Shown here: positions 10,381-64,000 of the stretch, piece after piece
How positions within the stretch are numbered: position 1 is the first letter of the stretch
How the letters are laid out: every line of letters begins with the position of its first letter
Notes under the pieces: generated by a model
What the model was told of the DNA's origin: nothing
Databases searched by the model: none
What the model saw: the letters and a program-made list of their open reading frames with translations, nothing else
Assembly (NCBI GenBank): GCA_010909165.1
Contig: MU008209.1
Span: 248,001-312,000, forward strand
DNA: 64,000 bases
Direction: 5' to 3'
Source: Anthoceros angustus
Lineage: Eukaryota; Plantae; Anthocerotophyta
Position numbers and translations under genes: made by a program

Positions 10381-11099
10381 CTGTGACTGCCAGTGGCCGG
10401 ATCTGGTAACTGCAATCTCTGAAAACGACCTGCTCGCTTCGCTTGCTCGATCAGCTCTAATGGTTGATTTCGATTATCTTTATCTTCACACTCTTTCCTG
10501 AATCTTGTTGAAGGATGCCTGTTGGACTTCATTCATGTCCCAGTATGTCATGCTTAGAACGTTGCAAATCAGATCGTGTTTCCTTTGCTTTGACAGGTCT
10601 CTCAAGAGCTTCAACTGTTACTGTAATCCCTGAAACTACCTGGTTGTTTTGCTTGATCTATCAGCTGTAATGCTTGAGGCCAATTAGCTCATGTTCACAC
10701 TTTGTTCTCGACCTCGTTGAAGGAAGCTTGTGGATTTCCTTCATGTCGTGCTTAGAACGTCGCTGATGAGATCGTGTTTCCTTCAGAACTAGTCATGGTC
10801 TGGCATACATTGTGCAGGATTGAAGCTCCAGGAAGTGCGAAACGGTTGCGCACCGCAGGAGTACAGGAATTGTCGACCCCGAAGCGAATCGGGCGAGATG
10901 GTATGCCTAACGTTAGGTCGAGCATTTTGGTTATGCTGGATGAATTCACGGCGCAGCCGTGAAAACCCTAAACCCTGAGGTTTGTCTTTGTCGTGCATTG
11001 CGAACTACCAGTGTGTTATTCTGTGAGAGCTGCTGAGCAGATTGAGCGATCGATCATCGAGGCGTGCCTGCTCCTTCGGCGCAGGCAGCGCGTCTCAAC

Positions 11100-11394
11100 A
11101 TGCTTCGAGCTGCAGTTCCTTCTATGGCCTCCAAGCTTGGCGGCCTCGCAGGTTTGAGCAAGAATGTGGTGAGCTCATTCCGCCTCCTGAGGGCCTCCAG
11201 CCGCCTCTTCTCCGCTGCTGACAACAGCTATCCCCGCCGCCATATTCATCTTACGACGACCAGCGTCAGCAGCAGCAGCAGCCGCAACAGCAGCATCAGC
11301 AGCCGCAACAGCAGCAGCCGCAGCAGCAGCAACAGCAACAGCAGCAGCAGCCTCAGGAGCAGCAGCAGCCTCCGTCTCAGCAGCAACAGCCGCA
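11100..11394 (+). pseudogene. Truncated duplicate of the 5' end of the PDF-motif gene
   Basis: MLRAAVPSMASKLGGLAGLSKNVVSSFRLLRASSRLFS followed by CAG-rich sequence, cut at the duplication B junction. Confidence 0.75.
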
Positions 11395-12109
11395 GCCTCC
11401 TCGCTTTCAGGCATCACAGTAAGCATGTTGAAGGACATGAAGGTAGTGTGAGAAAGCTGCAAGCGAGGACAAAACAATCTATGTCAGAGTGGTCCATAGG
11501 TTTTACCATTTGACAGGTCTCTCAACAGCTTCAACTGTGACTGCCAGTGGCCGGATCTGGTAACTGCAATCTCTGAAAACGACCTGCTCGCTTCGCTTGC
11601 TCGATCAGCTCTAATGGTTGATTTCGATTATCTTTATCTTCACACTCTTTCCTGAATCTTGTTGAAGGATGCCTGTTGGACTTCATTCATGTCCCAGTAT
11701 GTCATGCTTAGAACGTTGCAAATCAGATCGTGTTTCCTTTGCTTTGACAGGTCTCTCAAGAGCTTCAACTGTTACTGTAATCCTGAAACTACCTGGTTGT
11801 TTTGCTTGATCTATCAGCTGTAATGCTTGAGGCCAATTAGCTCATGTTCACACTTTGTTCTCGACCTCGTTGAAGGAAGCTTGTGGATTTCCTTCATGTC
11901 GTTAGAACGTCGCTGATGAGATCGTGTTTCCTTCAGAACTAGTCATGGTCTGGCATACATTGTGCAGGATTGAAGCTCCAGGAAGTGCAAACAGTTGCGC
12001 ACCGCAGGAGTACAGGAATTATCGACCCAAGCGAATCGGGCGAGATGGTATGCCTAACGTTAGGTCGAGCATTTTGGTTATGCTGGATGAATTCACGGCG
12101 CAGCCGTGA

Positions 12110-12123: not shown

Positions 12124-12246
12124 GAGGTTTGTCTTTGTCGTGCATTGCGAACTACCAGTGTGTTATTCTGTGAGAGCTGCTGAGCAGATTGAGCGATCGA
12201 TCATCGAGGCGTGCCTGCTCCTTCGGCGCAGGCAGCGCGTCTCAAC

Positions 12247-13775
12247 ATGCTTCGAGGCTCGGTTCCTTCTATGGCCTCCAAGCTTGGCGGCCTCAGGTTT
12301 GAGCAAGAATGTGGTGAGCTCATTCCGCCTCCTGAGGGCCTCAGCCGCCTCTTCTCCGCTGCTGACAACAGCTATCCCCGCCGCCATATTCATCTTACGA
12401 CGACCAGCGTCAGCAGCAGCAGCAGCCGCAACAGCAGCATCAGCAGCCGCAACAGCAGCAACAGCCGCAGCAGCAGCAACAGCAACAGCAGCAGCAGCCT
12501 CAGGAGCAGCAGCAGCAGCCTCCGTCTCAGCAGCAACAGCCGCAGCCTCCTCCTCAGCAGCAGCATCAGCAGCCGCAGGGATACCCGCCGCCGAATTATC
12601 CTCCGCCGAATTACTACCCGCAACAGGGATATCCTCAGCACGGGTACCCACAGCAGGGGTACCAGCAGCATGGCTACCCGCAGCAGGGTTACCAGCAGCA
12701 GGGATATCACCCGGGCTATCCTCCTCCGAACTACCCTCCTCCTCCGGGCTACCTGCCTCCCAACTATCCCCGCCGCCGCCTCCGGGCTACAACAGCCCCC
12801 TCCTCCCCTCCTCCCAGCTACGCCAACTACCCTCCTCCCCGCCTCCTCCACCCAGGCCTGCCTGCAGGCCTCCTCCGCCTCCCTCCAAGCCCGCCGAGCC
12901 CATTGATTGGCAGGCCAAGGAGTATCCTTGTCCTCCATACCCGCTTGGATACAAGCCTCCTCCTGACTGGAATGGACCCGGGTACCCTCCCCCTCCCGAA
13001 TCCCCTCCTCCTCCTCCCAGGATGGATGGTGGTCCTGGATACCCTAGAACCATCCCCAGGAGGATCTACCCCCGGAACAGGTTCAACCAGCCCCCACCGG
13101 TTCCAGTGGCTCCCAGACCCCCGCCCCCTCCTCCCCCTCCTTACACCGGGATTCCCCCTCCTGAGGAAGCGCTGAAGGGGCTGCCACCGCAATGGGAGGC
13201 TGTTATCCCCTATGGTACGCTTCTGGTGGCCTTGTTATGTCGTTTCTAACACACATTGTTGCGCTGACAAACCAATGTGCATAACGCAAATGGGTCCTGA
13301 CACTCGGTTGTTGTTTCTGATGCCCAGAGGAAATGGTGGAAAGAGATCGGCGCTGGAGGGAGTTCTTCAAGGACCCATCTCAGTGGTGGGATCATCGTAG
13401 CAGCAAGTTGAGCCACAAGGTAAGTGTTTCTTTTGCTGAACCCCTGGGCAGTGTGCCTGTATGGTTTCTCGCTTCTCCTGGTTTGCAAACTTGGAACTTG
13501 CCCTGCAAACCAGGAACTTGCCCGTCCAGGAGTAATCTTGTGCTTGTCTGGTTACGCAGAGAGACCCGAGGAAGCCTGACTTCGAGCACAAGGTGACCAA
13601 GGCGGAACTTTTCATCAACAGGTGGATCAACCCTAACTGGGTGGCAGAGGAGCTGAAGATCTTCAACGAGAAGCGTGCTGAAGAGCAGCGGCAAAGAATA
13701 GCGGCTCTGGATGCCAAGGAGGCAGCTGAGAAGGCGGAGAGGGAGAAGATGGCAGCAGCAGCAGCAGATATCTAA
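12247..13775 (+). CDS. Putative organelle-targeted Gln/Pro/Tyr/Gly-rich protein with one OSB-type PDF (ssDNA-binding) motif; 3 exons, apparent frameshifts
   Basis: Transit-like N-terminus ending RLFS, then polyQ, YPPPNY/QQGY repeats and polyPro. Exons 13328-13419 and 13560-13775 join in frame to WREFFKDPSQWWDHRSSK...RDPRKPDFEHKVTKAELFINRW. Restoring the frame needs small corrections, including +1 C at two tatcccc runs. Confidence 0.7.
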
Positions 13776-32852: not shown

Positions 32853-33536
32853 ATGGCGGCTTTCTCCAGCATCTTCGTCGCATGCATTGGCGTGCAATGG
32901 CAGCCGCTGGCGGGCTCTCAGGATTTCCGGGAGCGTTCCGTACTCGTCATGGTGCCCTGTCTTGGTTGGGGGCCTGCTAATGCGATACCTCAGCTATGGT
33001 GCAAGGCGTGGCGGAGGGAAGAGGCGGCCAGGAAGGCTCTGGTCAGGTTCTACCGAAGGTCTGATTGCTGCAAGCAGGTGGTGGGCCGCATTGAGGCTAT
33101 GGCGGGAGGAGGTCTTGCCAGTGTCTCAGTTCTCCAGGAGTGCAGGGGACTGGGGAATGGGAGCAGGTTGTGCCATGCCAGGGCCGGTTCGAGGGTGGCA
33201 GGGAGTGGGAACGAGGGCCGTGGGCTGATAGCTTGCACCAAGCTGGGGATGCCGTCTGGGCATTCCGCAATTTTCAGAGCTGCATCGGGGCTGTCAGTCT
33301 GTGGTGCAGACTGGCCCTCTGAAGGAGGAAGTGGAGGCTGAGCCTCAGCAGTTCAAGCTTACCCGTTTCCGGAGATAGAGGCGTACTGGCAGGCGTTCTG
33401 GGACGAGGAGCAGACGTTTCGCACGCCGAGGAGGTGGATACATCAAACCCAAGTTCTACGTGCTGGACATGTTTCCATATCCAAGGTTTCTCCGCTTCCG
33501 CTGAAATGCGCAAAGCTCTTGGATGGACCAGAGTTG
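32853..33536 (+). pseudogene. LeuRS 5' fragment, copy 1
   Basis: Transit peptide and [13 protein letters not shown] exon with indels; truncated at a junction. Confidence 0.7.
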
Positions 33537-34523
33537 TCTTCAGACTGCCTACCAAGAGAGCCATGCTCCAGCCTGGTCAAAGTCTTTGGGAACGCTTCAT
33601 AGAACAGTCCCTTCTCTCAGGGTGAACTTTCCACTGCAATCTCTTCATCTCCGCCTCCATCATCTCCCTGTTTCGACCATCACTAATCAAGCTCAACAAA
33701 TCTGCTCAACAAATCTCATATTAATTGTACACTCCAGCCTTCACTGCTCACCTGGTGCAGGGTCGGGCTGGAAAGATCAACCTCCATATTCTAGCCTTTT
33801 TGGTCATCCATCTCTGCAGAGTAGGATTCAAGTAGAAGGCAAATCCAAACTCGACTGCGAACAAGAGCCCGGTGGTAACCACAAGACCAGCCAGGCAAAG
33901 AGGCCCCATCCTGCTCTGTCCCAACAGAAATCCAGCAGCAATGCAATCAAAACGACTGCAGATTATCCAAAGCCGAACTCATGAAGCCTCAAATCACGGC
34001 AACCGGCATACAGGGAGTCAAGAATGCTTCAATGCACGAAGAGAAACAAATCTTCCAATGCCCATGACATACAAGTACCTCAGCGAGAAAAGTGTCACTC
34101 AATGGCGGATCTTTAGAGGCCAGAGGCGTTACAGCGCGGAGGAGAGTTCTTGCAAGCTCTCGGAGCAAGAAAACAAAGGACGTTGGCGGTTGTGGCCGAG
34201 GTCGCCGACTGTCGGTCGGTGCAGGGCCCAGTCGCACACCCAGCGGTCGTTCGTCTGCTACTGATCCGAATGGCTCCGGTGTTCTGTGGGTTTTAGAGCA
34301 ACACGAGGATGGGGAGGTTTAAGCAAAAAGCCTTCTGGACCAGAAGCGAAGCTGTGCAGAAGTCCTTCCTTCTCACATCAGTTGCAGCTCCGAAGTTGAT
34401 GAACGAGAGGAAATTTTCCTGTCTTGAAGCTTTGGAAATTCGACTTCTTCGAGCTTTTCATTGGAGTGCAAGGAATCGCATTTGATAGATCATGGGTGCC
34501 TAACAGGAGCACGTTGGGTCGTG

Positions 34524-36348
<1,825 letters not shown>

Positions 36349-36554
36349 TAAGCAAAAAAGCCTTCTGGACCAGAAGCGAAGCTGTGCAGAAGTCCTTCCT
36401 TCTCACATCAGTTGCAGCTCCCGAAGTTGATGAACGAGAGGAAATTTTCCTGTCTTGAAGCTTTGGAAATTCGACTTCTTCGAGCTTTTCATTGGAGTGC
36501 AAGGAATCGCATTTGATAGATCATGGGTGCCTAACAGGAGCACGTTGGGTCGTG

Positions 36555-43793
<7,239 letters not shown>

Positions 43794-44075: not shown

Positions 44076-44144
44076 GGATGAGAATCAATTCATGGAAGCT
44101 AGATTGTTATTCGCGTAGATGTCAGCTGCCAGTGGTTGCGAGCT

Positions 44145-46748
44145 ATGGCTGTCTGGAGCGTTGCAATTGAGACAGGCAAAGGGCAACTGGACCCGTTGTG
44201 GGCACGGTCCTCGTGGACCCAACAAAGTGGTGGGCTGCCAGCTGCCGGACGTCTAACTTCAAGAAACCAGGACTTGGCAAACAACGAACCTCCGATGTGC
44301 AGCACCTTTAGAAACTCACCCAGTCCAGTAGTATGTCGGGCTGGAGACAGAACCTCCATCGACCAAGAGCTTGATGCGCTGGATACGAAGATCGGTCGTC
44401 GCAGGCATTCAGGGTACGAAAGGAGTGTAACGGCTGAGACCGTGATCAAGTTATGTCGTCAAGGCCATCTCTCTGAGGCTGTTAACGCTTTGGAAGTTCT
44501 GGTAGAGACAGACTGTCGTGTCTCCAGGCCCCTCTTTTACACTGTGCTGAAGGAATGTGTGGTGAAGAAGGATGTTCGTCTAGGTAGCCGAGTCCATGCT
44601 TTCACGGCAAAGATGGGTTACGAGTCAGATACGTTCCTGTGCAATTACATTCTGCGAATGTATGCCTCTCATGGCAGGCTGCAAGACGCGGTGGATGTGT
44701 TTGAAGCCGTTGCAAAACCAGATGCCTTCATGTGGTCTTCCATAATTTTTGCACATGTTAAACACGGACAAGACAGGCAGGCCCTACAACTGTATAATCG
44801 GATGCGCAAGTCCAGTGTGAAGCCAGACGGCCATGTATTTGTGGCAGCCCTTCAGGCTTGTGCAAGGGGGCAAGACTTGAAAACTGGGCAGGAGCTACAT
44901 GCTGCTGTGTTAGCTTGTGGCGTTGAGCCGAATGTGTTTGTCTCTAGTTGCTTGGTGGACATGTATGCAAAGTGTGGCAGCTTAGAAGACGCTCAAAGAG
45001 TGTTTGACGCACTTGGCCAAAAGAATGTGGTCACGTGGACTGCTCTAATAGCAGGATATTACCAGCAGGGCAATGGGCAGGAAGCTCTTCGTCTCTTCAG
45101 GGAAATGGAAGCAGAAGGCATCGCTGTACCCAATTCGGTGACATTTGTGTGCCTCCTGCAGGCATGTGCAAGTGTGGGCACTCCAGCTTTGGAGATGGGG
45201 AAGCAGATTCATGTGCAGATCAGAGAACGAGGCCATCAAGATGATGTGTTTGTAGCCAACAGTTTGGTGAACATGTATGCAAAGTGTGGCAGCTTGGAGG
45301 ATGCTCAGGGAGTGTTTGACGGACTTGATCGGAAAGATGTGGTGACATGGAATGCCCTGATGGTAGGATATACCAAGCAGAGCATGGGCCATGAAGCCCT
45401 TCGTCTCTATCGAGCTATGCAGAAAGAAGGCTTGGTTGCACCCAATTGCCCGACATTCGCATGCCTCCTGCAGGCATGCGCAGGTGTGGGCACTTCAGCT
45501 TTGGAGGTGGGGAAGCAGCTTGACAAGCATATTAGAGAACAAGGACATCAAGATGATGTGGTTCTAGCCAACAGTTTGGTGAACATGTATGCTAAGTGTG
45601 GCAGCTTGGAAGACGCTCAGAGGGTGTTTGATGGACTGGATCAAAAGAACGTTGTGACGTGGAATGCCATGATAGCAGGATACTCTCAGCAGGGCATGGG
45701 GCAGGAAGCCCTTCGACTTTACATAGCCATGGAACAAGAGGGCATCACTGTACCTGATGCCGTGACATTTGTCTGCCTCCTTCAGGCATGTGCAAATGTG
45801 GCAGCTTTGCATCTGGGAAGGCAGCTGCATGCACAGATTGAAGAGCAAGGGCTTCAAGCTGATGTGTTTGTAGCCAGCAGTTTGGTGAACATGTATGGAA
45901 AATCTGGGAGCATGGTTGATGCACGACAGGTGTTCGATGAATTGCCTGAACGAGGCATTGTTTCCTGGAGTGCACTGATTGCAGGCTACTCCTGCCAGGG
46001 AGACAGTGAAGTGGTCTTCGACCTGGTGCAGAGAATGACAGAGGACGGCATTCAGCCAGACAGCATCACTTTCCTCAGCATACTAACGGTCTGCAGCCAC
46101 GCAAGTCTAGTGGACAAGGGGAGTGAGTACTTCCAGGCTATGAGCAGGAACTACGGAATCTCACCCACAGTAGAGCACTACACATGCATGGTGGATCTCC
46201 TGGGCCGTGCAGGCCTACTCAATGAGGCATTATCTGTGGTAAGAACAATGCCTGTCCCGCCCAATGCTGCTGTGTGGCACACTCTGCTGGGTGCTTGTAG
46301 AAAGTGGAGCAACGTCGAAGTAGGACGTCACGCTTTCGACCAAGCAGTGAAGCTAGACAATAGAGATGCTGCAGCATATGTGTTGATGTCCAACATATAC
46401 AGGAGTGCAGAGATGTGGGATCAGGCAGGCGAGATACGGTCGAGGAGGACAAGCATCAGGACATGGAAGCAGCGAGCTCAGAGCTGGTGGACAGACATGG
46501 CTGGACTGGTGCATAGTTTTCTGGCTGCGGATGAAAAGCATCCCAAGAATCAAGCCAGGCTGAAACACATGTTTTCCAAATTGAAGAATGAAGAATATGC
46601 AGACTCTTCACCGACAGACTTCTCTGTTGATATAAAGCAAAATGGTTTGCATGGGCACAGCGAGCAGCTGGCTATGTTACCTTCCCTCAACGACAAACCC
46701 CATATTCCTTGTGAAAGATACACCTTGAGACATTGTTTGATCTCTTGA
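44145..46748 (+). CDS. Intronless PLS-class PPR protein (~18 motifs, E1-E2, truncated DYW); probable RNA-editing factor
   Basis: Repeating P-L-S triplets (VVTWNA.., VTFVCLLQAC, LVNMYAKCGS), then P2-L2-S2 (PTVEHYTCMVDLLGRAG), E1, E2, AQSWWTD and HGHSEQLA, with no CxxC or DYW terminus. Confidence 0.93.
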   Translation: MAVWSVAIETGKGQLDPLWARSSWTQQSGGLPAAGRLTSRNQDLANNEPPMCSTFRNSPSPVVCRAGDRTSIDQELDALDTKIGRRRHSGYERSVTAETVIKLCRQGHLSEAVNALEVLVETDCRVSRPLFYTVLKECVVKKDVRLGSRVHAFTAKMGYESDTFLCNYILRMYASHGRLQDAVDVFEAVAKPDAFMWSSIIFAHVKHGQDRQALQLYNRMRKSSVKPDGHVFVAALQACARGQDLKTGQELHAAVLACGVEPNVFVSSCLVDMYAKCGSLEDAQRVFDALGQKNVVTWTALIAGYYQQGNGQEALRLFREMEAEGIAVPNSVTFVCLLQACASVGTPALEMGKQIHVQIRERGHQDDVFVANSLVNMYAKCGSLEDAQGVFDGLDRKDVVTWNALMVGYTKQSMGHEALRLYRAMQKEGLVAPNCPTFACLLQACAGVGTSALEVGKQLDKHIREQGHQDDVVLANSLVNMYAKCGSLEDAQRVFDGLDQKNVVTWNAMIAGYSQQGMGQEALRLYIAMEQEGITVPDAVTFVCLLQACANVAALHLGRQLHAQIEEQGLQADVFVASSLVNMYGKSGSMVDARQVFDELPERGIVSWSALIAGYSCQGDSEVVFDLVQRMTEDGIQPDSITFLSILTVCSHASLVDKGSEYFQAMSRNYGISPTVEHYTCMVDLLGRAGLLNEALSVVRTMPVPPNAAVWHTLLGACRKWSNVEVGRHAFDQAVKLDNRDAAAYVLMSNIYRSAEMWDQAGEIRSRRTSIRTWKQRAQSWWTDMAGLVHSFLAADEKHPKNQARLKHMFSKLKNEEYADSSPTDFSVDIKQNGLHGHSEQLAMLPSLNDKPHIPCERYTLRHCLIS

Positions 46749-51004: not shown

Positions 51005-54000
51005 TCAGAAAACATCACTGAAGGTTTGGGCAGCACTAGCAGGTGGCGGGGTTTGGGAGGCTTGGGCGATCTTGTCCCAGCCCAGGTCGAAGGTGTCGTC
51101 ACCGTGGGCACCATCATCTGCATGGGCACGGGCATCCAGATGGGAGGCGACGGGGGCCTCGAGGGACGGCGGATTCCTGCACCGGATGAGCGGCCAGTTG
51201 AAGCCCTGGAAGAAGGGGTGCTGCTTGATGTCGTTGGCGCCGCGGAAGGCCCCCAGGCGCCGCGCCGGGTCCCGGTGCAGCAGCGCGCCGATGAGCTGAC
51301 GCGCCGGGAGCGAGACGGGAATGCTAGCCGGAAAAGTGAGCTCCTGCTGCAGGACGTTGACGAAGGTGAGGTGACGGTTCCGGCCGCGGAAGGGAGTGCG
51401 GCCGTACAGCATCTCGTAGAGCAGGATGCCGAGCGCCCACCAGTCGACGGCGCTGGTGTGGCCCTCCCCATTGATCACCTCCGGCGCGATGTACTCCTCG
51501 GTGCCGACGAAGGAGTTGGAGGCGGCGCTGGGCTGTGCGCAGAAGACGGGCTGCTGCTGCTCGCGCCGCCGCTTGCGCCGCCGCATCGGGCCGACATGGC
51601 TCTGCAGGAGCTGCGGGCGCGAGGAGGTGAGGAAGGAGAGGTCGAAGTCGGTAAGCAGAATGTGGCCGTTGTCCTGGAGCAGCACGTTCTCGGGCTTGAG
51701 GTCCCGGTAGATGACGCCCATGTAGTGCAGATACTCCAGGGCGATCACCACCTCGGCGGCGTAGAACCGGGCCGCGTCCTCGCTGAAAATCTTACGCGGC
51801 TGCTCCTCCTGGAGCACAAATAGCTCCCCGCCGGGGCAGAAGTCCGTGATGAGGCACACGTGCGTGCGCGTCTGGAAGCTGGCGTAGAGCGTGGGCAGAA
51901 AGGGGTGGTCCACCATGGCCAGGATGCTGCGCTCCGCGCGCGCCCGGTGCACCTTGTTGCGCCGCACCATGGCGCCCTTGTCCATGGCCTTCATGGCGAA
52001 CACATGGCCCGTGCCCCGCAGCTCCACCAGGTACACGGACCCCGTGTCCCCGCGGCCCAGCGGCCTGAGCGGCCGGAAGTCCTTCAGGCCCAGCCCCTGC
52101 CCCTGCCCCCGCCGCTGCACCCTCCCGATGGCGTGCCACTGCGCGCTGTTGAGCTTGTGCGGCCGCGCAGTCACGGGCCCCGAGTGCGCCACCCACAGCG
52201 CGTCCGGGGTCTGGTCCGCGTCCGGCAGCTGCCGCGTCGCCCTGTCCACGGTCTTGGCCGTCGTCTTGTTGCTCTTCACCAGCAAATGCTGTGCTGCTGC
52301 TGCTCCTCCTCCTCCTGCTGCTGCTTCAACTTCCCCCTCCTGCTCTGCATCGACGGCGGCAGGGGCAGGGGCGAGGGCGGGAATCTTCTTCCTCGCCTTT
52401 GCAGACGAACCCCTGTCCTTGCTGGGAACATAGTCCGCCACCTTCTGCTGCACGCCGATGAAGTACTGTAGCGCCCCGCTCTCCGGGTCGCGCATGGCCT
52501 GCAGGTGGAACAGGTTCCAGAACGCCTGCCCGCCCTTGGTGTAGTTCACCATCTCCAGGGTCAGGTCACGGGCGTCGCGCACTGCGTCCCGGATCTTCTT
52601 CACGCTGGCCGGGTCCGTGTCCGGGCCCTGCAAGAAGCGGCAGTTCCGGCCCAGAACCTCCTCCCGGGTGTACTCCGTCAGGTCCAAGAAGCGGTCGGAG
52701 GCGAAGATGATGGGGTTGTCGTCAAGCCGGGGGTCCGTGATGACGAAGCTGTCGTCGATGCGCTCCAGCGTGGTGGCCAGATCCACTCCCCGCCGCGTCC
52801 GCTCCGGCAACCGGACGCGGTCGATCCTCCGTCGTCCTCCACCATAACCACCTCCAGCTCGGGGTACGCGGACTCCTGCGCAGCCGCCGCCACTGCCGCC
52901 GCCACGTCCTCCAGCAGCAGCGGCTTCCTCTCCTGCTCCGAGATCGCGGACCCGCTCGTCGCCAGCCCGCTGCTGCTGTTGCTCCCGCTCGACAACCCGG
53001 GCACCAGCTTCGTCCTCGGCTCAGACGCCAGCGACAGATTCGACATGGACACGAACCCGGGGCCGAGCAGCGGGGGCGGCTGCTCCAACACCTGCCTGGG
53101 CCGCGCCACGGCCGCCACCAAATCCCCCACCAGCCCCTTGGCCTTCTCCTCCTGCCGCGCGTCGTACCGGATGAGCGACTGCGGGAGCCCCTTGGGCCGC
53201 ACCGCGTCCGCCATCGCCCCCTCCGTGTGCTTGCTCACTTCCGCCTGCATCCCCACGAAATGCGTCGTCGCCCCGGCATCGTCCTTCACCGCCGTGATGG
53301 TCAGCAGGTTCCAGAAGGTGGACCCGTCCTTCTTGTAGTTGAGAATCCTGCCGCAGAACCTCCCGCTCCCGCCATCCCCCAGCGCGGCCCGAATCTGCTC
53401 CACCTGCCCCGGGTCCGTGTCCGGGCCCTGCAGGAAGCGGGGATTCGCTCCCAGCACCTCCTTCGTCCCGTACCCCGTCATGGCGAAGAACCCCGCGCTG
53501 GCGAAGATGATGGGGTAATCCGGCTTCCCGGCGTCGCACACCAAGAACGCGAGCGGGAACGACCCCAGCGCGTCCTTCACCTCCCGGCTCATCCCGCTAA
53601 CGCCATCGCTCCCCTCCGAGCTCCGCATCGCCTCCATCCACTCACGCGCCAAACTGCACGGCATGGACAGCGACGGGCCATTACCCCCGGGCCCGCCACC
53701 GCCAGGCACGGGCAGGGACAGCGACATGACGCGCGACATGGACGTACTCGTCTTCACGCCGGAGCTCCCGCTGCCTTCGTCGTTCGCCTCCTCCTCCCGC
53801 TGCAAGATGAGGTGCAGGGAATGGATGGCGTCCCGGTCCACCTCCTCCCACGCCGAGCTCCGCCCCTTGATGTACTCCGCGAACGCCAGGAAGGAAGAGC
53901 GCGGGTGAAGCCTGCTCCCGTCATCGCCTTCCTCCGCGCTGTGCCGCGCCCCGGCCCAGCTCCGCTCCCGGGGCTCCTGCGACCGGAACCAGAACACGAA

Positions 54001-55523
54001 GGAGCCGGCCGGCGAGATCCTGGCCGCGGCCATCCCGGCTACGGCGTCCCCGAGCGCGGCTGCTCCGGGGTACCCAGACTCCGTGAGGGAGTCGGACACG
54101 AAATCCACCACATCCTTGTCCTGCCGCAGCAGCCATCCCGCCATCTCCCGGATCTGCGCCTCAGTCGGCGTGGTGCCGAGCATCCAAATCCGCTTCCCGT
54201 AGTAGAGCGCGGCGCCGGAACAGTCCACCAGATCCATCACCGTCGGCGCCTGCACCACCACTCCCACCGGGAGCTCCCGCAGCAGCATGTCGCAGAGCAG
54301 CCCCTCGTTCCTCTGCACCCGCTCCTGCCGCACCTGCTCCGCGTAGTCCATCTCGCGGTTCAGCTGCGCCGCGAAGGCCTGCACCAGGGACTCGCAGGCC
54401 TTCCGGAGCGGGAAGGGGAGGGTGCGCGGAGTGGTGTGGTGGCACACCACCAGCCCCCACAGCCTCCGGCTCCCGCTCAGCTCCTCCTCCGCGTCGCGGG
54501 TCACCACCGCCAGGGCCAGCGATGCCACGGACCCCATGTTGGCCATGTACTGGGCGTGGCAGGCGTGCGGGGAGCGCAGGCTGGACCCGGCCAGACTGAT
54601 GGGCTGATGCAGCTCCCGGGACTGCACCACCCGTACCGGGGTGGAGACGCAGTCGGCGATCATCCGCACTCGCTCCTTCATGAACAGGAACCTGGACGCC
54701 TGGGGCACGTCCGTGGCCGGGTAGTGCAGCCCGATGTACGGCTCCAGGTCCGCGCGCAACCTCTCCGCCACCACCTCCCCGTGCTCGTCCTCGTGGAACT
54801 TGTACGCCATCACCCGATCGTACCCCGTGAGATCCCGCACCTCCTCCACCACCAGGTCCAGCAGCGTCCGCAGGTCTCCCCGCACCGGCAAGGCCTGCAC
54901 CCGCGCGATGGCCGCCCTCGCCGCGCCCGCCGACACGAACATGTCCGTGGCCTCCGCTGGCTCCAGATCCACCACCAGGCCCCCGATCTCGTCGTTCGCC
55001 CGCAGCATCGCGTACAAGGGAACCCCGCTCTTGCTGTTCACCGCCAGCGGATTCAGGATCCCCGGATCCTCCGCCTCCGCCGCCTTCTCCACCACCGCCA
55101 CGCTGCTCTCCGCCAGAAGCTCCCGCGCGTCCGTCCCGATCCCGACCTCCTGCACATTCTTCCCGCCCTTGAGCCCTAGCACTTCCGCCGCGTTCTCGCT
55201 GTACGCCATCACCCGGAAGCTCTCCTCCTCCACCGCCAGCATGCACCCGAACGACTGCGTCACTCCCCCGCGCTGCATCGCGCGGAGGTACGCCGTCACC
55301 GCCTCGCTCGGCAGCTCCACCCCTCCGCCTCCGCCCCCGCCAGAGCCGCCATCCCCGCTGCCTTGGGGTACCGGTTGGATCCCCCCTCGTACGCCGCGTG
55401 CAGTCTGGCATCCGCGCTCGTCTGCGCCACCCGCACCCCGTGCCGGGACTTGCTGCTGCTCGCAGCTCCTGCTCCGCCCGAGCCCGAGCCCGAGCTCGAG
55501 CTGGGCCGCGGAGAGCGCAACAT
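51005..55523 (-). CDS. NEO: Neochrome (phytochrome-phototropin chimera), intronless; ~1506 aa after restoring two 1-nt deletions
   Basis: NTE SSKSRHGVRVAQTSADARLH; PAS QRGG..QSFGC; GAF TGYDRVMAYKFH, DVPQASRFLF, PHACHAQYM; PHY PRSSF; LOV1 ..NPRFLQ..FWNLL..GMQ; LOV2 NCRFLQ; AGC kinase GDTGSV, RDLKPEN, DFD, SNSFVGTEEY. Pieces lie in three successive frames (ORFs 55296-55523, 52678-55320, 51005-52810). Confidence 0.95.
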
Positions 55524-55864
55524 CTTGTCTTGTTGTTCAAAACCTTATCCTCCTCGAGCTCCTCCCTCCGAATGCACAAACACAACTCCCTGCTGCAGAG
55601 AATGGAATGCCTCTGCTGCAAATCAGCGATCAAATCCTCCTCCTGCCAAATCTTGAGCGTGACACATCGAGCAACAGGAACATCTTCTGAGGAAGAAGAA
55701 GAAGAAGAAGAGACAGCAGTCGAAGCCAGCAAGAAGCAGCGGGAATGCAACAAATGGCGCTTTATAATGCAAGAGGAGCTGAGGAAGGCGGCCATAGCCA
55801 GGGCGGTGCGAGGAGCATGTGGCGAGCACTTATCTGCGCAGAAAGCGCGCCGCGTGCTACCTCA

Positions 55865-55878
55865 AATTAGGCCTAATT
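55865..55878. promoter_or_regulatory. 14-bp perfect palindrome in the neochrome/F-box divergent intergenic region
   Basis: AATTAGGCCTAATT. Confidence 0.4.
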
Positions 55879-56123
55879 AAAGGCCAAGCACATGAGCCAG
55901 CGGCGCCGCCATGAGCCCTTGCCAGAGGCAAGCGCGGGGACCCGATCCGCGGTACCGGAGATCTCGATCTCCCGCCTCACGCGTCCGCGCGGGTTTAATC
56001 CCCGCCGGCCCCGGCAGCTGAGCACCATTCGTGCACCAGATCTGCAGCTGCTCCTCCTCCTGGGGATGGCCGGCTGTCGCTGGCGGCTTCACTACATCCT
56101 GCAAAGTGCACAGAGCGGGCGTC

Positions 56124-57425
56124 ATGTACAGCAGCAAAGGAGAGCGAGAGCCCGAGGGCGAGGGCCAGGGCCAGGGCGAGTCCCTGTTCGTGTTCATGGC
56201 GGACGAGCTCGAGGGCGGGCAGCAGCAAGACCAGCAAGACAGCAGCCAGTGGATGGATCCGGAGCTGTGGAGCAGGCTGCCGGAGGATGTGATCGCCTTG
56301 GTGCTGATGAAGCTCCCCGTGCTGAGCCACTTCAGATTCATGTGCGTGTGCAGGAGGTGGCGCGTGATGCTCTCGGACACCGGCTTCGCCAAGCTCTGCT
56401 GCGCCGCGGTGGAGCAGCCGACGGCCTCGGGGCCGCCGTCCTGCCTGTGCGGGATGGCCTCCGGATCCAGCCCGCCTGCGGCTGAGATCAAGATCCCGGG
56501 GTCCAGCCTCCGGCCTCACCGATTCCACCGCTCCTCGCTCCCCGCGGATCCGGCCGACGCCGCGAGCCAGCTTGATCTCTGGGCCTCCGACCGGGGCCTG
56601 CTCTGCTTCAGCAAGCGGAAGCAGCCGTACGGCGAGGCGCATCTCTACATCTGCAATCCTGTGACCCGGAGCTGGAAGAAGCTGCCTCCCGCCAGATTCG
56701 ACCAGTTCGAGTCCCCGCACCGCGCCTTCTTGCAGGTCCTGGATCCCGGCCATGCTGCGGCTGCGGCTAAGTACGAGGTGGTGCTGCTGGCCAAGACGCT
56801 CGCCGGCGGATGCTGTGTCTTCGTCTACGCGGCCGGAGCTCGGCGATGGCGGAGGCTGGAGTGGGAGGAGATCTCGGTTCCTGCATCCGGCGCCTTCGAT
56901 CCCGTGCTCTGTAACGGCGTGCTGCATGTCCTCGGATGCTCTTCCGGATCCGATCCGTTCAAGCGCGCGCTCAGCTCCTTCTGCGTGCGCAGCAAGCGGG
57001 AGGTGGCCGTGCCGGCTCCTCCCGCGGCCCGGTGCCGGAAGCTGGTGGAGCACCACGGATGCCTCTTCATTGTCTCCTTCTTGGAGCCGTTCGCGGGCCT
57101 GTCGGTGTGGAAGCTGGAGGATGCGGATCCGGAGAAGAAGCTCGCAGCCGCCGTGTGGACGCACGTCTCCACCTGCAGTGTGCAGAAATTCGCGCAGCTC
57201 ACCGGCTCCTGCAAGCCGCCTCTGCTCGCCAAGGTCGGGGCTATAGGAGGATTCATCTGCCTCTGCATAGACAACAAAACCGGGAGCTCCGCGTTGCAGC
57301 ACACTCTGGCTTTGTGCACCCGGGACAACAGCTGGTGCGTATGGGACTTTGGAATTGCGGATCCCCGCCGTTCCAAGCTGCTCCCGTTTCAGCCAACACT
57401 TACGACTTCTGTGACAACGCCATAG
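56124..57425 (+). CDS. Intronless F-box protein with a C-terminal beta-propeller-like (FBA/kelch-like) region
   Basis: LWSRLPEDVIALVLMKLPVLSHFRFMCVCRRW F-box; DRGLLC, YICNPVTRSWKKLP, PVLCNGVLH. The start may instead be at 56196. Confidence 0.88.
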   Translation: MYSSKGEREPEGEGQGQGESLFVFMADELEGGQQQDQQDSSQWMDPELWSRLPEDVIALVLMKLPVLSHFRFMCVCRRWRVMLSDTGFAKLCCAAVEQPTASGPPSCLCGMASGSSPPAAEIKIPGSSLRPHRFHRSSLPADPADAASQLDLWASDRGLLCFSKRKQPYGEAHLYICNPVTRSWKKLPPARFDQFESPHRAFLQVLDPGHAAAAAKYEVVLLAKTLAGGCCVFVYAAGARRWRRLEWEEISVPASGAFDPVLCNGVLHVLGCSSGSDPFKRALSSFCVRSKREVAVPAPPAARCRKLVEHHGCLFIVSFLEPFAGLSVWKLEDADPEKKLAAAVWTHVSTCSVQKFAQLTGSCKPPLLAKVGAIGGFICLCIDNKTGSSALQHTLALCTRDNSWCVWDFGIADPRRSKLLPFQPTLTTSVTTP

Positions 57426-62463: not shown

Positions 62464-64000
62464 CTAATTTGTCGACCAATCGGAATCGTAACCAAGACGT
62501 TGTGATTTACATTGAGAGCTACTACTACTTGAGGAGGAATTTTGTGTCTTCTCCCTCTGCACCACAGGACTTGGCCCCATAAATATGGCAGACAATTTCA
62601 CCTTTGGCGAGGATAATCTATCTTGTGTGCTTGGCGATGATGGCATGTTTTTTGGTGATGTTACATTGGATCCTCTTGGACTCATAGTTCCATCACTACG
62701 TTTGGAATTTATCCTCAATAAAATGTCTTGCTTTTTCCTGCTATCAAGCTCTTCTAGTTTGGCATTTGCTACAGCCAACATATTAAGCCTTGGTACTCTA
62801 CTTTTAGTGGATGATGATTGTGGAGTTTGTTGTTTTTGTTGATTTGGCAATATTTTCCTTTTCTCATATTTTGGTGATTTCTGCCCTTGATTAATCTGTA
62901 ATCTAACAGACTCAAACATGGACAGAAATTGTCTTAATGTCTTGAATATCTCAATTGTCTTTTCTTGCTTTGGAACTTCCCCGAAGAATAGGGCTATATT
63001 ATTAATTTTTTCAAGGACATTATGCAATAAAACCTCTAGCCCACAAATATTTTCATGAGTTTGCTCAGCAAACAAGGTCATTTTTTGAGTGAAGTTAATT
63101 TCAAAATCTGATTGATTTGTGCATTGTTTAATTTCTTCATTCACGGTGGTAAGACCTCGTTTGAGGTCATGTAACTTTTCTTGTACATCCCCTATATTTA
63201 TGCTGGATGCTTGCTTTACATCTTCAAAATCATGAGCTAATTTTCCAATCTGCATATAATGATCAATTTTAATCTATTGTTTTAATTTATTTTCTTACTC
63301 TATAAATAAATAACACCTAATGTGTCTCACCTCTGTGTCCTTTTTCAATAGCTCGGACACCACAAAGTGGAGAAGAGTAGTGTTGGTATTTTTCCCCTTT
63401 ATATCCATAAGCTTTAGTAAAGCATCTAATTTGAATCCACTTGCACATCCACGAAAGGATCCACCATTTAGATGGTTACCCACAACTAATACCATCTTCA
63501 AGATCTTCACAAACTTTTTGCTACTTTTTAACTCAATACATGATTTCTCCAATATAGTAAGATCGTATTTAATCTGTTTCATGAATATCACCATAATTGA
63601 TTATATTAATTTCAATATTAAAATAGATATCCCTAAACATAATATATCCAAGAAAATTACAGATAGAACCCTACTTGTTCAATGGTTCTATTACATTGTG
63701 TTTTAAACAACAATGCTATACTCTTATTTTTAAACCGTGGTATTTTCATCAACTCCATATAGTATCTAAAGAGCACGATTAAAGCAACAAGTCATAAAGC
63801 TATGTAGATCATGTTGAAAATTTACAGCCATCCTTTTGAAGCATAAAGTGTTAAAAATTAATTCCTTACTTCTCAATTTCCGAGAGCTGAGATACGTCAT
63901 CATTGTAATCTTTCAATAGTTTCACATCCTCTTCACTAGGCATAGTACGACTCATTAGCTGAAGTACCTCATCGGTAAGCACAAGTTCATCCAACTCCAA
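62464..64000 (-). CDS. Formin, C-terminal FH2 exons; gene continues beyond the window
   Basis: LKMVLVVGNHLNGGSFRGCASGFKLDALLKLMDIKG...TLLHFVV and FFGE..IEIFKTLRQFLSMF; upstream exon MPSEEDVKLLKDY. Confidence 0.88.

What the first reader, a model, noticed from the sequence alone, without database searches (positions are those of the whole stretch)
51005..55523. Intronless neochrome: a red/far-red plus blue chimeric photoreceptor
Seen: a phytochrome sensory module (bilin Cys at 54559-54561, DVP, PRSSF) fused to LOV1-LOV2-AGC kinase with no introns. Known: neochromes are documented in ferns, hornworts and zygnematalean algae, and fern neochrome is thought to derive from hornworts by horizontal transfer. 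Inference: the compact intron-rich neighbours point to a hornwort. If the source is any other lineage (e.g. lycophyte, moss, liverwort), this would be an unreported neochrome occurrence.
Basis: partly seen in the sequence, partly recalled or inferred. Interest (0 to 1): 0.85.

Follow-up and report, generated by a model that had tools for sequence, protein, structure and literature searches.

The report
Hornwort neochrome gene, already known
This is the red-plus-blue light receptor gene "neochrome" of an Anthoceros-type hornwort, a gene already described in that group in 2014, and its two reading-frame breaks are most likely sequencing errors in the assembly.

Summary
On the minus strand, 55523..51005 encodes a phytochrome PAS-GAF-PHY module joined directly to LOV1, LOV2 and a Ser/Thr kinase. 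The bilin cysteine is exactly at 54559-54561. No intron is needed.

One break is in a G run at 55320-55323. The other is at 52826-52830. Each fits one missing base.

The closest protein, P0001, is a partial hornwort-type neochrome filed in 2014. It is 91-96% identical and reads straight through both breaks. Trees place the gene with P0001. The phototropin half groups with the other hornwort and fern neochromes and with hornwort phototropins.

So the source is a hornwort, most likely Anthoceros (probably A. angustus, inferred). Neochrome has been documented there since Li et al. 2014. The finding is real but already known.

I could not test the frame breaks with reads. Two tandem repeat copies elsewhere in the window differ by 17 small indels and one substitution. 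That is the mark of long-read consensus errors, so I rate the breaks as assembly errors (about 85%) rather than a pseudogene (about 12%).

One side point: LOV1 lacks the photoactive cysteine (Pro at 53440-53442) in this gene and in P0001 only.

The parts
51005..55523 (-). Whole neochrome coding region (about 1506 codons in three frame segments), from ATG 55521-55523 to stop 51005-51007
55324..55523 (-). N-terminal extension in the first frame, carrying the conserved phytochrome/neochrome N-terminal motif (VRVAQTSADARLHAAYEG)
   Evidence: matches the N-termini of the Nothoceros, Megaceros and fern neochromes
55320..55323 (-). Frame break 1: a GGGG run. One more G would join the N-terminus to the PAS domain (AEG-VELPSE).
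   Evidence: P0001 reads through in one frame
54955..55290 (-). PAS_2 domain of the phytochrome module
   Evidence: E 2e-24
54355..54876 (-). GAF domain, holding ATDVPQ (54700-54717) and the bilin-binding Cys
54559..54561 (-). Bilin attachment cysteine codon (TGC) in SPHACHAQYM
53803..54312 (-). PHY domain with the tongue motifs WAG and HPRSSF (53890-53907)
53239..53523 (-). LOV1 (PAS_9). The adduct cysteine is replaced by Pro at 53440-53442 (GANPRFLQ).
52826..52830 (-). Frame break 2, in the LOV1-LOV2 linker (GG-A-GG). One base is missing between 52829 and 52828 (VEDDG | RIDRVRLPERTRRGVDLATT).
   Evidence: P0001 reads VEDDGRIERARLLERTRRGVDLATT in one frame
52448..52753 (-). LOV2 (PAS_9) with the adduct cysteine at 52640-52642 (GRNCRFLQ), followed by a J-alpha-like segment
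   Evidence: E 4e-54 to phot1 LOV2 4hhd; E 1e-48 to Adiantum PHY3 LOV2 1g28
51209..52069 (-). AGC-type Ser/Thr protein kinase domain.
   Evidence: (Pkinase E 1e-61, profile 4-263 of 263)

Best explanation
This is the single-exon neochrome gene of an Anthoceros-type hornwort, probably A. angustus. It is the orthologue of the Anthoceros neochrome published in 2014.

Inferred mechanism, from the family. The N-terminal PAS-GAF-PHY module binds a bilin at the cysteine encoded at 54559-54561 and switches between red- and far-red-absorbing forms. LOV2 binds FMN and forms the blue-light cysteinyl adduct through the cysteine at 52640-52642. That releases the C-terminal AGC kinase, so red/far-red and blue signals converge on one kinase output. 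In ferns this output drives chloroplast movement and phototropism. It has not been tested in hornworts. LOV1 keeps its flavin-contact residues but has Pro in place of the adduct cysteine, so blue sensing probably rests on LOV2 alone.

Shown here: the domain order, the key residues, colinearity with a relative's protein, and the phylogenetic placement. Inferred: chromophore binding, the photochemistry, the species name, and that the two one-base frame breaks are long-read consensus errors rather than mutations.
For: Domains and residues.

Nearest relative: P0001 is 91% identical over PHY plus LOV1, 95-96% over the PHY module and 88-92% over the PHOT module. It is colinear through both frame breaks.

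Trees: the window gene and P0001 pair at 100/100 in both module trees. All neochromes form one set at 95/92 in the PHOT tree, and join hornwort phototropins at 99/100. All 13 neochromes form one clade in the best PHY tree, at 68/83.

Signs of an intact gene: the terminal branches of the window gene and P0001 are equal (0.027 vs 0.024 and 0.053 vs 0.047). GC3 is 0.85-0.93 in each homology-defined frame segment. There are no stops in those frames, and the conserved N- and C-termini are present.

Error signature in this same window: two tandem copies (36699-38881 and 38881-41062) differ by 17 indel events, mostly single bases in homopolymers, against 1 substitution.

Sequencing runs: the best DNA run, from 2019, holds only 0.71 of the gene's words. 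That fits weak short-read cover of a 68% GC gene (inference). The A. angustus assembly was built from Nanopore reads with wtdbg and polished with Pilon (PMC7027989). RNA runs of a related species (organism C) hold as many of the gene's words as that species' DNA runs do, 0.11 each. This suggests the orthologue is transcribed there.
Against: No protein of the same species was found in the collections. The neighbouring intronless genes, a PPR gene (2.6 kb) and an F-box gene (1.4 kb), have no frame break, and none was seen in the LeuRS exons at tblastn resolution. So errors are not everywhere. The RNA run of the source sample holds only 0.04 of the words. The genus and species are therefore inferred. 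The PHY-module placement with other neochromes is only weakly supported, and the branch is long (0.97).
Confidence: 0.82

Rival explanations
1. The two frame breaks are real mutations. In this species or individual, neochrome would then be a recent pseudogene, or would yield at most truncated products. From ATG 55523 the frame stops after about 75 codons. An internal start could give PHY plus LOV1 without LOV2 and the kinase.
For: The assembly as given has both breaks. No independent sequence of this species contradicts them. The RNA run of the same sample holds few of the gene's words (0.04). The neighbouring intronless genes are unbroken.
Against: Both breaks are single missing bases at G runs. 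That is the same kind of difference that separates two near-identical tandem copies in this window 17 times against 1 substitution. There are no other lesions. The terminal branch length equals that of the relative. Strong GC3 periodicity is kept in every segment. All key residues are intact.
Confidence: 0.12
2. The fusion is an assembly chimera that joins a phytochrome gene to a phototropin gene.
For: The window comes from an error-prone long-read assembly, and it contains a suspicious tandem repeat.
Against: The PHY-LOV1 junction lies inside one 880-codon ORF. An independently obtained protein filed in 2014 has the same order from PAS to kinase at 91-96% identity. Both halves are far from the canonical hornwort phytochrome (60% identity) and phototropin (about 55%). 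Neither half is therefore a copy of those genes.
Confidence: 0.01
3. The gene belongs to a lineage other than hornworts (fern, lycophyte, moss, liverwort or alga), which would make it a new occurrence of neochrome.
For: Organism names are coded or missing for the closest sequence and for the sequencing runs.
Against: Fern neochromes are only 48-55% identical. P0001 falls in the same 2014 UniParc series as the hornwort neochromes, and it shows the long, poorly placed branch that PMC4525182 reports for Anthoceros neochrome. A small 2015 run holding part of the gene fits the published A. punctatus photoreceptor capture experiment. Another follow-up in this scan also read the genome as a hornwort (a lead only).
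Confidence: 0.03

Closest known systems
Anthoceros neochrome (Li et al. 2014, PNAS 111:6672; probably P0001 = UPI00045ECABD, partial, 1350 aa)
   Same: Same domain order and colinear, with no introns needed. Identity is 91-96% in PHY plus LOV1 and 88-92% in the PHOT module. Both share the LOV1 Cys-to-Pro change and the long branch.
   Different: About 5-10% amino-acid divergence and a few small linker indels, so probably another Anthoceros species. The window copy has two one-base frame breaks that P0001 lacks.
Fern neochrome (Adiantum capillus-veneris PHY3/NEO1, Nozue et al. 1998; LOV2 structures 1G28/1JNU)
   Same: Same PAS-GAF-PHY-LOV1-LOV2-kinase architecture. The PHOT module falls in the same clade, and the LOV2 matches 1g28 at E 1e-48.
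   Different: Only 48-55% identical. Ferns keep the cysteine in both LOV domains. Fern genes nest inside the other hornwort neochromes, not next to the Anthoceros pair.
Nothoceros and Megaceros neochromes (P0136, P0137)
   Same: Hornwort neochromes with the same architecture and the same conserved N- and C-termini.
   Different: About 53% identical. They have the cysteine in LOV1 and sit on a shorter branch.
Zygnematalean neochrome (Mougeotia scalaris NEO, Suetsugu et al. 2005)
   Same: A phytochrome-phototropin chimera.
   Different: The phototropin half has an independent origin, and the cysteine is missing in LOV2, not LOV1 (PMC4532919). No algal neochrome sequence was in my data set, so this was not compared directly.
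Canonical hornwort phytochrome (P0012, P0013) and phototropin (P0122, P0123, P0126)
   Same: They are the parent families of the two halves. The PHY module is 60% identical to Anthoceros phytochrome, and the PHOT module is about 55% identical to hornwort phototropins.
   Different: The window gene has no PAS-PAS-histidine-kinase-related tail after PHY. It carries the whole phototropin in its place.

Membership tests
Neochrome (phytochrome-phototropin chimera) | N-terminal phytochrome photosensory module PAS-GAF-PHY with the bilin-binding cysteine and the DIP-type and PRxSF motifs | tested here: met
   Pfam PAS_2, GAF and PHY. Cys at 54559-54561, plus ATDVPQ and HPRSSF. E 4e-179 to plant phytochrome structures.
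Neochrome (phytochrome-phototropin chimera) | A complete phototropin (LOV1, LOV2, AGC Ser/Thr kinase) follows PHY in the same gene, replacing the phytochrome PAS-PAS-HKRD output | tested here: met
   PAS_9 twice and Pkinase 4-263/263, with no HisKA or HATPase hit. The junction lies inside one ORF. Caveat: LOV2 and the kinase lie in another frame after a one-base break.
Neochrome (phytochrome-phototropin chimera) | One continuous reading frame | tested here: inconclusive
   There are two frame changes in the assembly. P0001 reads through both. The window shows a long-read indel-error signature. A read test was not possible.
Hornwort/fern neochrome lineage | The PHOT module groups with hornwort and fern neochromes and with hornwort phototropin, not with algal or vascular-plant phototropins | tested here: met
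   neochromes 95/92, and with hornwort phototropins 99/100.
Hornwort/fern neochrome lineage | The PHY module groups with the other neochromes | tested here: inconclusive
   One clade in the best tree, but at 68/83 only, on a long branch of 0.97. PMC4525182 also reports unstable placement of Anthoceros neochrome.
Hornwort/fern neochrome lineage | No introns. I recall this for the fern PHY3 and A. punctatus genes from Nozue 1998 and Li 2014, which I could not read here. | tested here: met
   The DNA is colinear with P0001 from residue 1 to 1228, with only small in-frame linker indels and the two one-base breaks.
Neochrome (phytochrome-phototropin chimera) | Binds bilin and FMN, shows red/far-red reversibility and blue-light-driven autophosphorylation | not testable with these tools
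   Needs recombinant protein. The LOV1 adduct cysteine is absent, and the LOV2 cysteine is present.

The most novel reading that the evidence does not exclude
The two frame breaks are real. This hornwort would then have recently lost a working neochrome, or would keep only a phytochrome-LOV1 stub. That would be a natural knockout in the lineage where the gene arose.
Probability: 0.12. Interest if true: 0.4.

Novelty: already known. Interest (0 to 1): 0.14.

Why it matters
Neochrome is a textbook case of a new photoreceptor made by gene fusion and of plant-to-plant horizontal transfer, from hornworts to ferns. Finding it in a hornwort genome only confirms what is published.

The practical point is that automatic annotation of this assembly will probably split or truncate the gene at the two one-base breaks. 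Any count of photoreceptors, or any claim of gene loss made from this assembly, should be checked against reads.

The Anthoceros-specific loss of the LOV1 cysteine is a small lead that could be tested for how this receptor senses blue light.

Tried and rejected
There is therefore no read-level evidence on the junction or the frame breaks. Queries stopped at 51720 or above, or used other genes. Local scripts cut the gene at 51721 and 51676. The one exception is a homopolymer count over the whole gene, which printed counts only.

2. I looked for proteins of the same species called on public contigs. The searches with the PHY plus LOV1 piece, with P0001 region 585-1010 and with the LOV2 piece found none. 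Exact look-ups of two window ORFs were not on record.

3. Tiny introns at the frame breaks were rejected. P0001 aligns across both sites without room for an intron.

4. I checked the LeuRS gene for frame breaks inside exons, using homologues. None was visible at tblastn resolution, so this gave no support either way.

5. Li et al. 2014 and Suetsugu et al. 2005 are not held in the library. Statements about their intron findings rest on my memory.

6. Earlier first-reader notes of homopolymer frameshifts in other genes of this genome were used as leads only. The test I rely on is, in this window.
Full report
**What is in the sequence**

On the minus strand, three large ORFs cover 55795..51005 in different frames. 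Translating all three frames shows one gene that runs in three frame segments.
- Segment 1 starts at ATG 55523 and reads MLRSP...VRVAQTSADARLHAAYEGGSNRYPKAAGMAALAGAEAEG.
- Segment 2 runs from about 55320 to about 52831 and reads VELPSEAVTAYLRAMQRGG...YPELEVVMVEDDG.
- Segment 3 runs from 52828 to the stop at 51005-51007 and reads RIDRVRLPERTRRGVDLATTLERI...QTFSDVF.

Pfam finds these domains:
- In segment 2: PAS_2 (E 2e-24), GAF (2e-18), PHY (5e-45) and a LOV-type PAS_9 (3e-13).
- In segment 3: PAS_9 (3e-16) and a complete protein kinase domain (1e-61, profile positions 4-263 of 263).
- No histidine-kinase-related domain follows PHY.

- The bilin cysteine is at 54559-54561 (SPHACHAQYM).
- ATDVPQ is at 54700-54717.
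- HPRSSF is at 53890-53907.
- The LOV2 adduct cysteine is at 52640-52642.

The phytochrome piece matches solved plant phytochrome photosensory modules at E 4e-179. The LOV2 piece matches phototropin LOV2 at E 4e-54 and the LOV2 of Adiantum PHY3 (1g28) at E 1e-48. The PHY-LOV1 junction (about 53800-53540) lies inside a single 880-codon ORF. The fusion is therefore read directly from the sequence.

**The two frame changes**

It missed that the gene is not one ORF.

The nearest database protein is P0001 (UPI00045ECABD). It is a partial sequence of 1350 residues with no name attached. It reads through both break sites in one frame.
- At break 1, P0001 has ...AGAEEDEQLELPSE..., where the window has ...AGAEAEG / VELPSE...
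- At break 2, P0001 has ...VEDDGRIERARLLERTRRGVDLATT..., where the window has ...VEDDG / RIDRVRLPERTRRGVDLATT....

There is no room for an intron at either site. At the DNA level, each break equals one missing base. The first is in the GGGG run 55320-55323. The second is between 52829 and 52828, in GG-A-GG.

**Are the breaks real?**

The direct test was to lay reads on the sites. It failed. 

Indirect routes to an independent sequence of the same species also failed:
- No near-identical protein from public contigs turned up.
- Two exact look-ups were not on record.

The following evidence remains.
- **No decay beyond the two breaks.** The gene has no stops in the homology frames. The N- and C-termini are conserved. 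All key residues are present. GC3 is 0.85-0.93 in each segment in its own frame. The terminal branches equal those of P0001 (0.027 vs 0.024 in the PHY tree, 0.053 vs 0.047 in the PHOT tree).
- **An error signature in the same window.** A tandem repeat of about 2.1-2.2 kb lies at 33000-41060. Its copies at 36699-38881 and 38881-41062 differ by 17 indel events and a single substitution. Nearly all the indels are one base in a homopolymer or one unit of a short repeat. Biological divergence does not look like that. Unpolished long-read consensus does.
- **Weak short-read cover.** The best DNA run, from 2019, holds only 0.71 of the gene's sampled words. That fits weak short-read cover of a 67-74% GC gene (inference).
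- **A matching assembly method.** If the genome is Anthoceros angustus, its paper describes Nanopore reads assembled with wtdbg and polished with Pilon (PMC7027989).

Some evidence points the other way. The two neighbouring intronless genes are unbroken: a PPR gene at 44136-46748 and an F-box gene at 56031-57425. I also saw no frame break inside the LeuRS exons.

I put assembly error at about 85% and a real, recent pseudogene at about 12%.

**Whose gene is it?**

P0001 is 91% identical over PHY plus LOV1. It is 95-96% identical over the PHY module and 88-92% over LOV1 to the kinase N-lobe. Fern neochromes are 48-55% identical. The Nothoceros and Megaceros neochromes are about 53% identical. 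Canonical Anthoceros phytochrome is 60% identical.

In the PHOT-module tree:
- The window gene pairs with P0001 at 100/100.
- All neochromes form one set at 95/92.
- That set joins hornwort phototropins at 99/100.
- Fern neochromes nest among the hornwort ones.

This reproduces the published picture of a hornwort origin and transfer to ferns (PMC4532919, PMC4525182).

In the PHY-module tree, the pair sits on a long branch of 0.97. It joins the other neochromes only weakly, at 68/83. PMC4525182 reports the same instability for the Anthoceros neochrome.

The species is inferred from the sequencing runs, whose names are coded.
- The source-like DNA run dates from 2019.
- Three related organisms hold 0.09-0.16 of the words.
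- One of those organisms has a small 2015 run, which fits the published A. punctatus photoreceptor capture experiment.

I infer an Anthoceros species, probably A. angustus, but I could not read a label.

**How it most likely works**

This section is inferred from the family. The phytochrome module binds a bilin at the GAF cysteine and photoconverts. LOV2 binds FMN and forms the cysteinyl adduct in blue light. [quoted passage not shown]

In ferns this raises light sensitivity for phototropism and chloroplast movement. In hornworts the function is still untested (PMC10030945).

One local peculiarity concerns LOV1. In the window gene and in P0001, it reads GANPRFLQ instead of G-x-NCRFLQ. Every other neochrome and phototropin I compared keeps the cysteine in both LOV domains. 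The other flavin-contact positions of LOV1 (N, R and Q of the motif, the IR arginine, the two asparagines and the final glutamine) are present in the translation. LOV1 probably still holds flavin but cannot form the adduct, so blue sensing would rest on LOV2. The papers I could read mention cysteine loss only for the LOV2 of algal neochromes.

**Verdict**

It is not new. Neochrome in hornworts, Anthoceros included, has been known since 2014, and it is single-copy in A. punctatus.

The useful additions are the two one-base frame breaks, which will mislead gene models built on this assembly, and the evidence in this window that they are consensus errors.

Noticed in passing
window 53440-53442: The LOV1 adduct cysteine is replaced by proline (GANPRFLQ) in this gene and in P0001 only. 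Nothoceros, Megaceros and the fern neochromes, and hornwort phototropins, keep NCRFLQ in both LOV domains. The papers I read flag cysteine loss only in the LOV2 of algal neochromes.
   Followed up: partly
window 33000-41062: A tandem repeat of about 2.04-2.18 kb carries the 5' exons of an organellar-type leucyl-tRNA synthetase three times (starts near 35022, 37064 and 39247). The 3' exons (41431-43787) occur once. Copies 2 and 3 differ by 17 small indels and 1 substitution. The repeat is either very recent or an assembly artefact, and the differences look like long-read consensus errors.
   Followed up: partly
window 51005-57425: The neochrome gene is 67-74% GC with GC3 of 0.85-0.93. The divergently oriented intronless F-box gene next to it (56031-57425) has GC3 of 0.83. 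The intronless PPR gene at 44136-46748 has GC3 of 0.52, and the window average GC is about 0.5. This is a sharp local GC3 island.
   Followed up: partly
window 11064-11513 and 12140-13249: Two neighbouring copies of the same N-terminal coding segment (MPAPSAQAARLNML...SRLFSAADNSYPRRHIHL). The second copy needs two frame switches to match the first. It may be another case of indel errors or of a decayed duplicate.
   Followed up: no
L001 1724-6127 (Logan contig SRR32617136_3107, 6704 nt): A public contig carries a 1467-residue neochrome as one uninterrupted ORF (P0183). In both module trees it sits between the Nothoceros/Megaceros neochromes and the fern neochromes. The organism is unknown to me.
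   Followed up: partly
window 63295-63594 (-) and 62464-63255 (-): ORFs that look like exons of a formin (FH2-type motif GNHLNGGSFRG...LLHFVV) at the AT-rich right end of the window.
   Followed up: no
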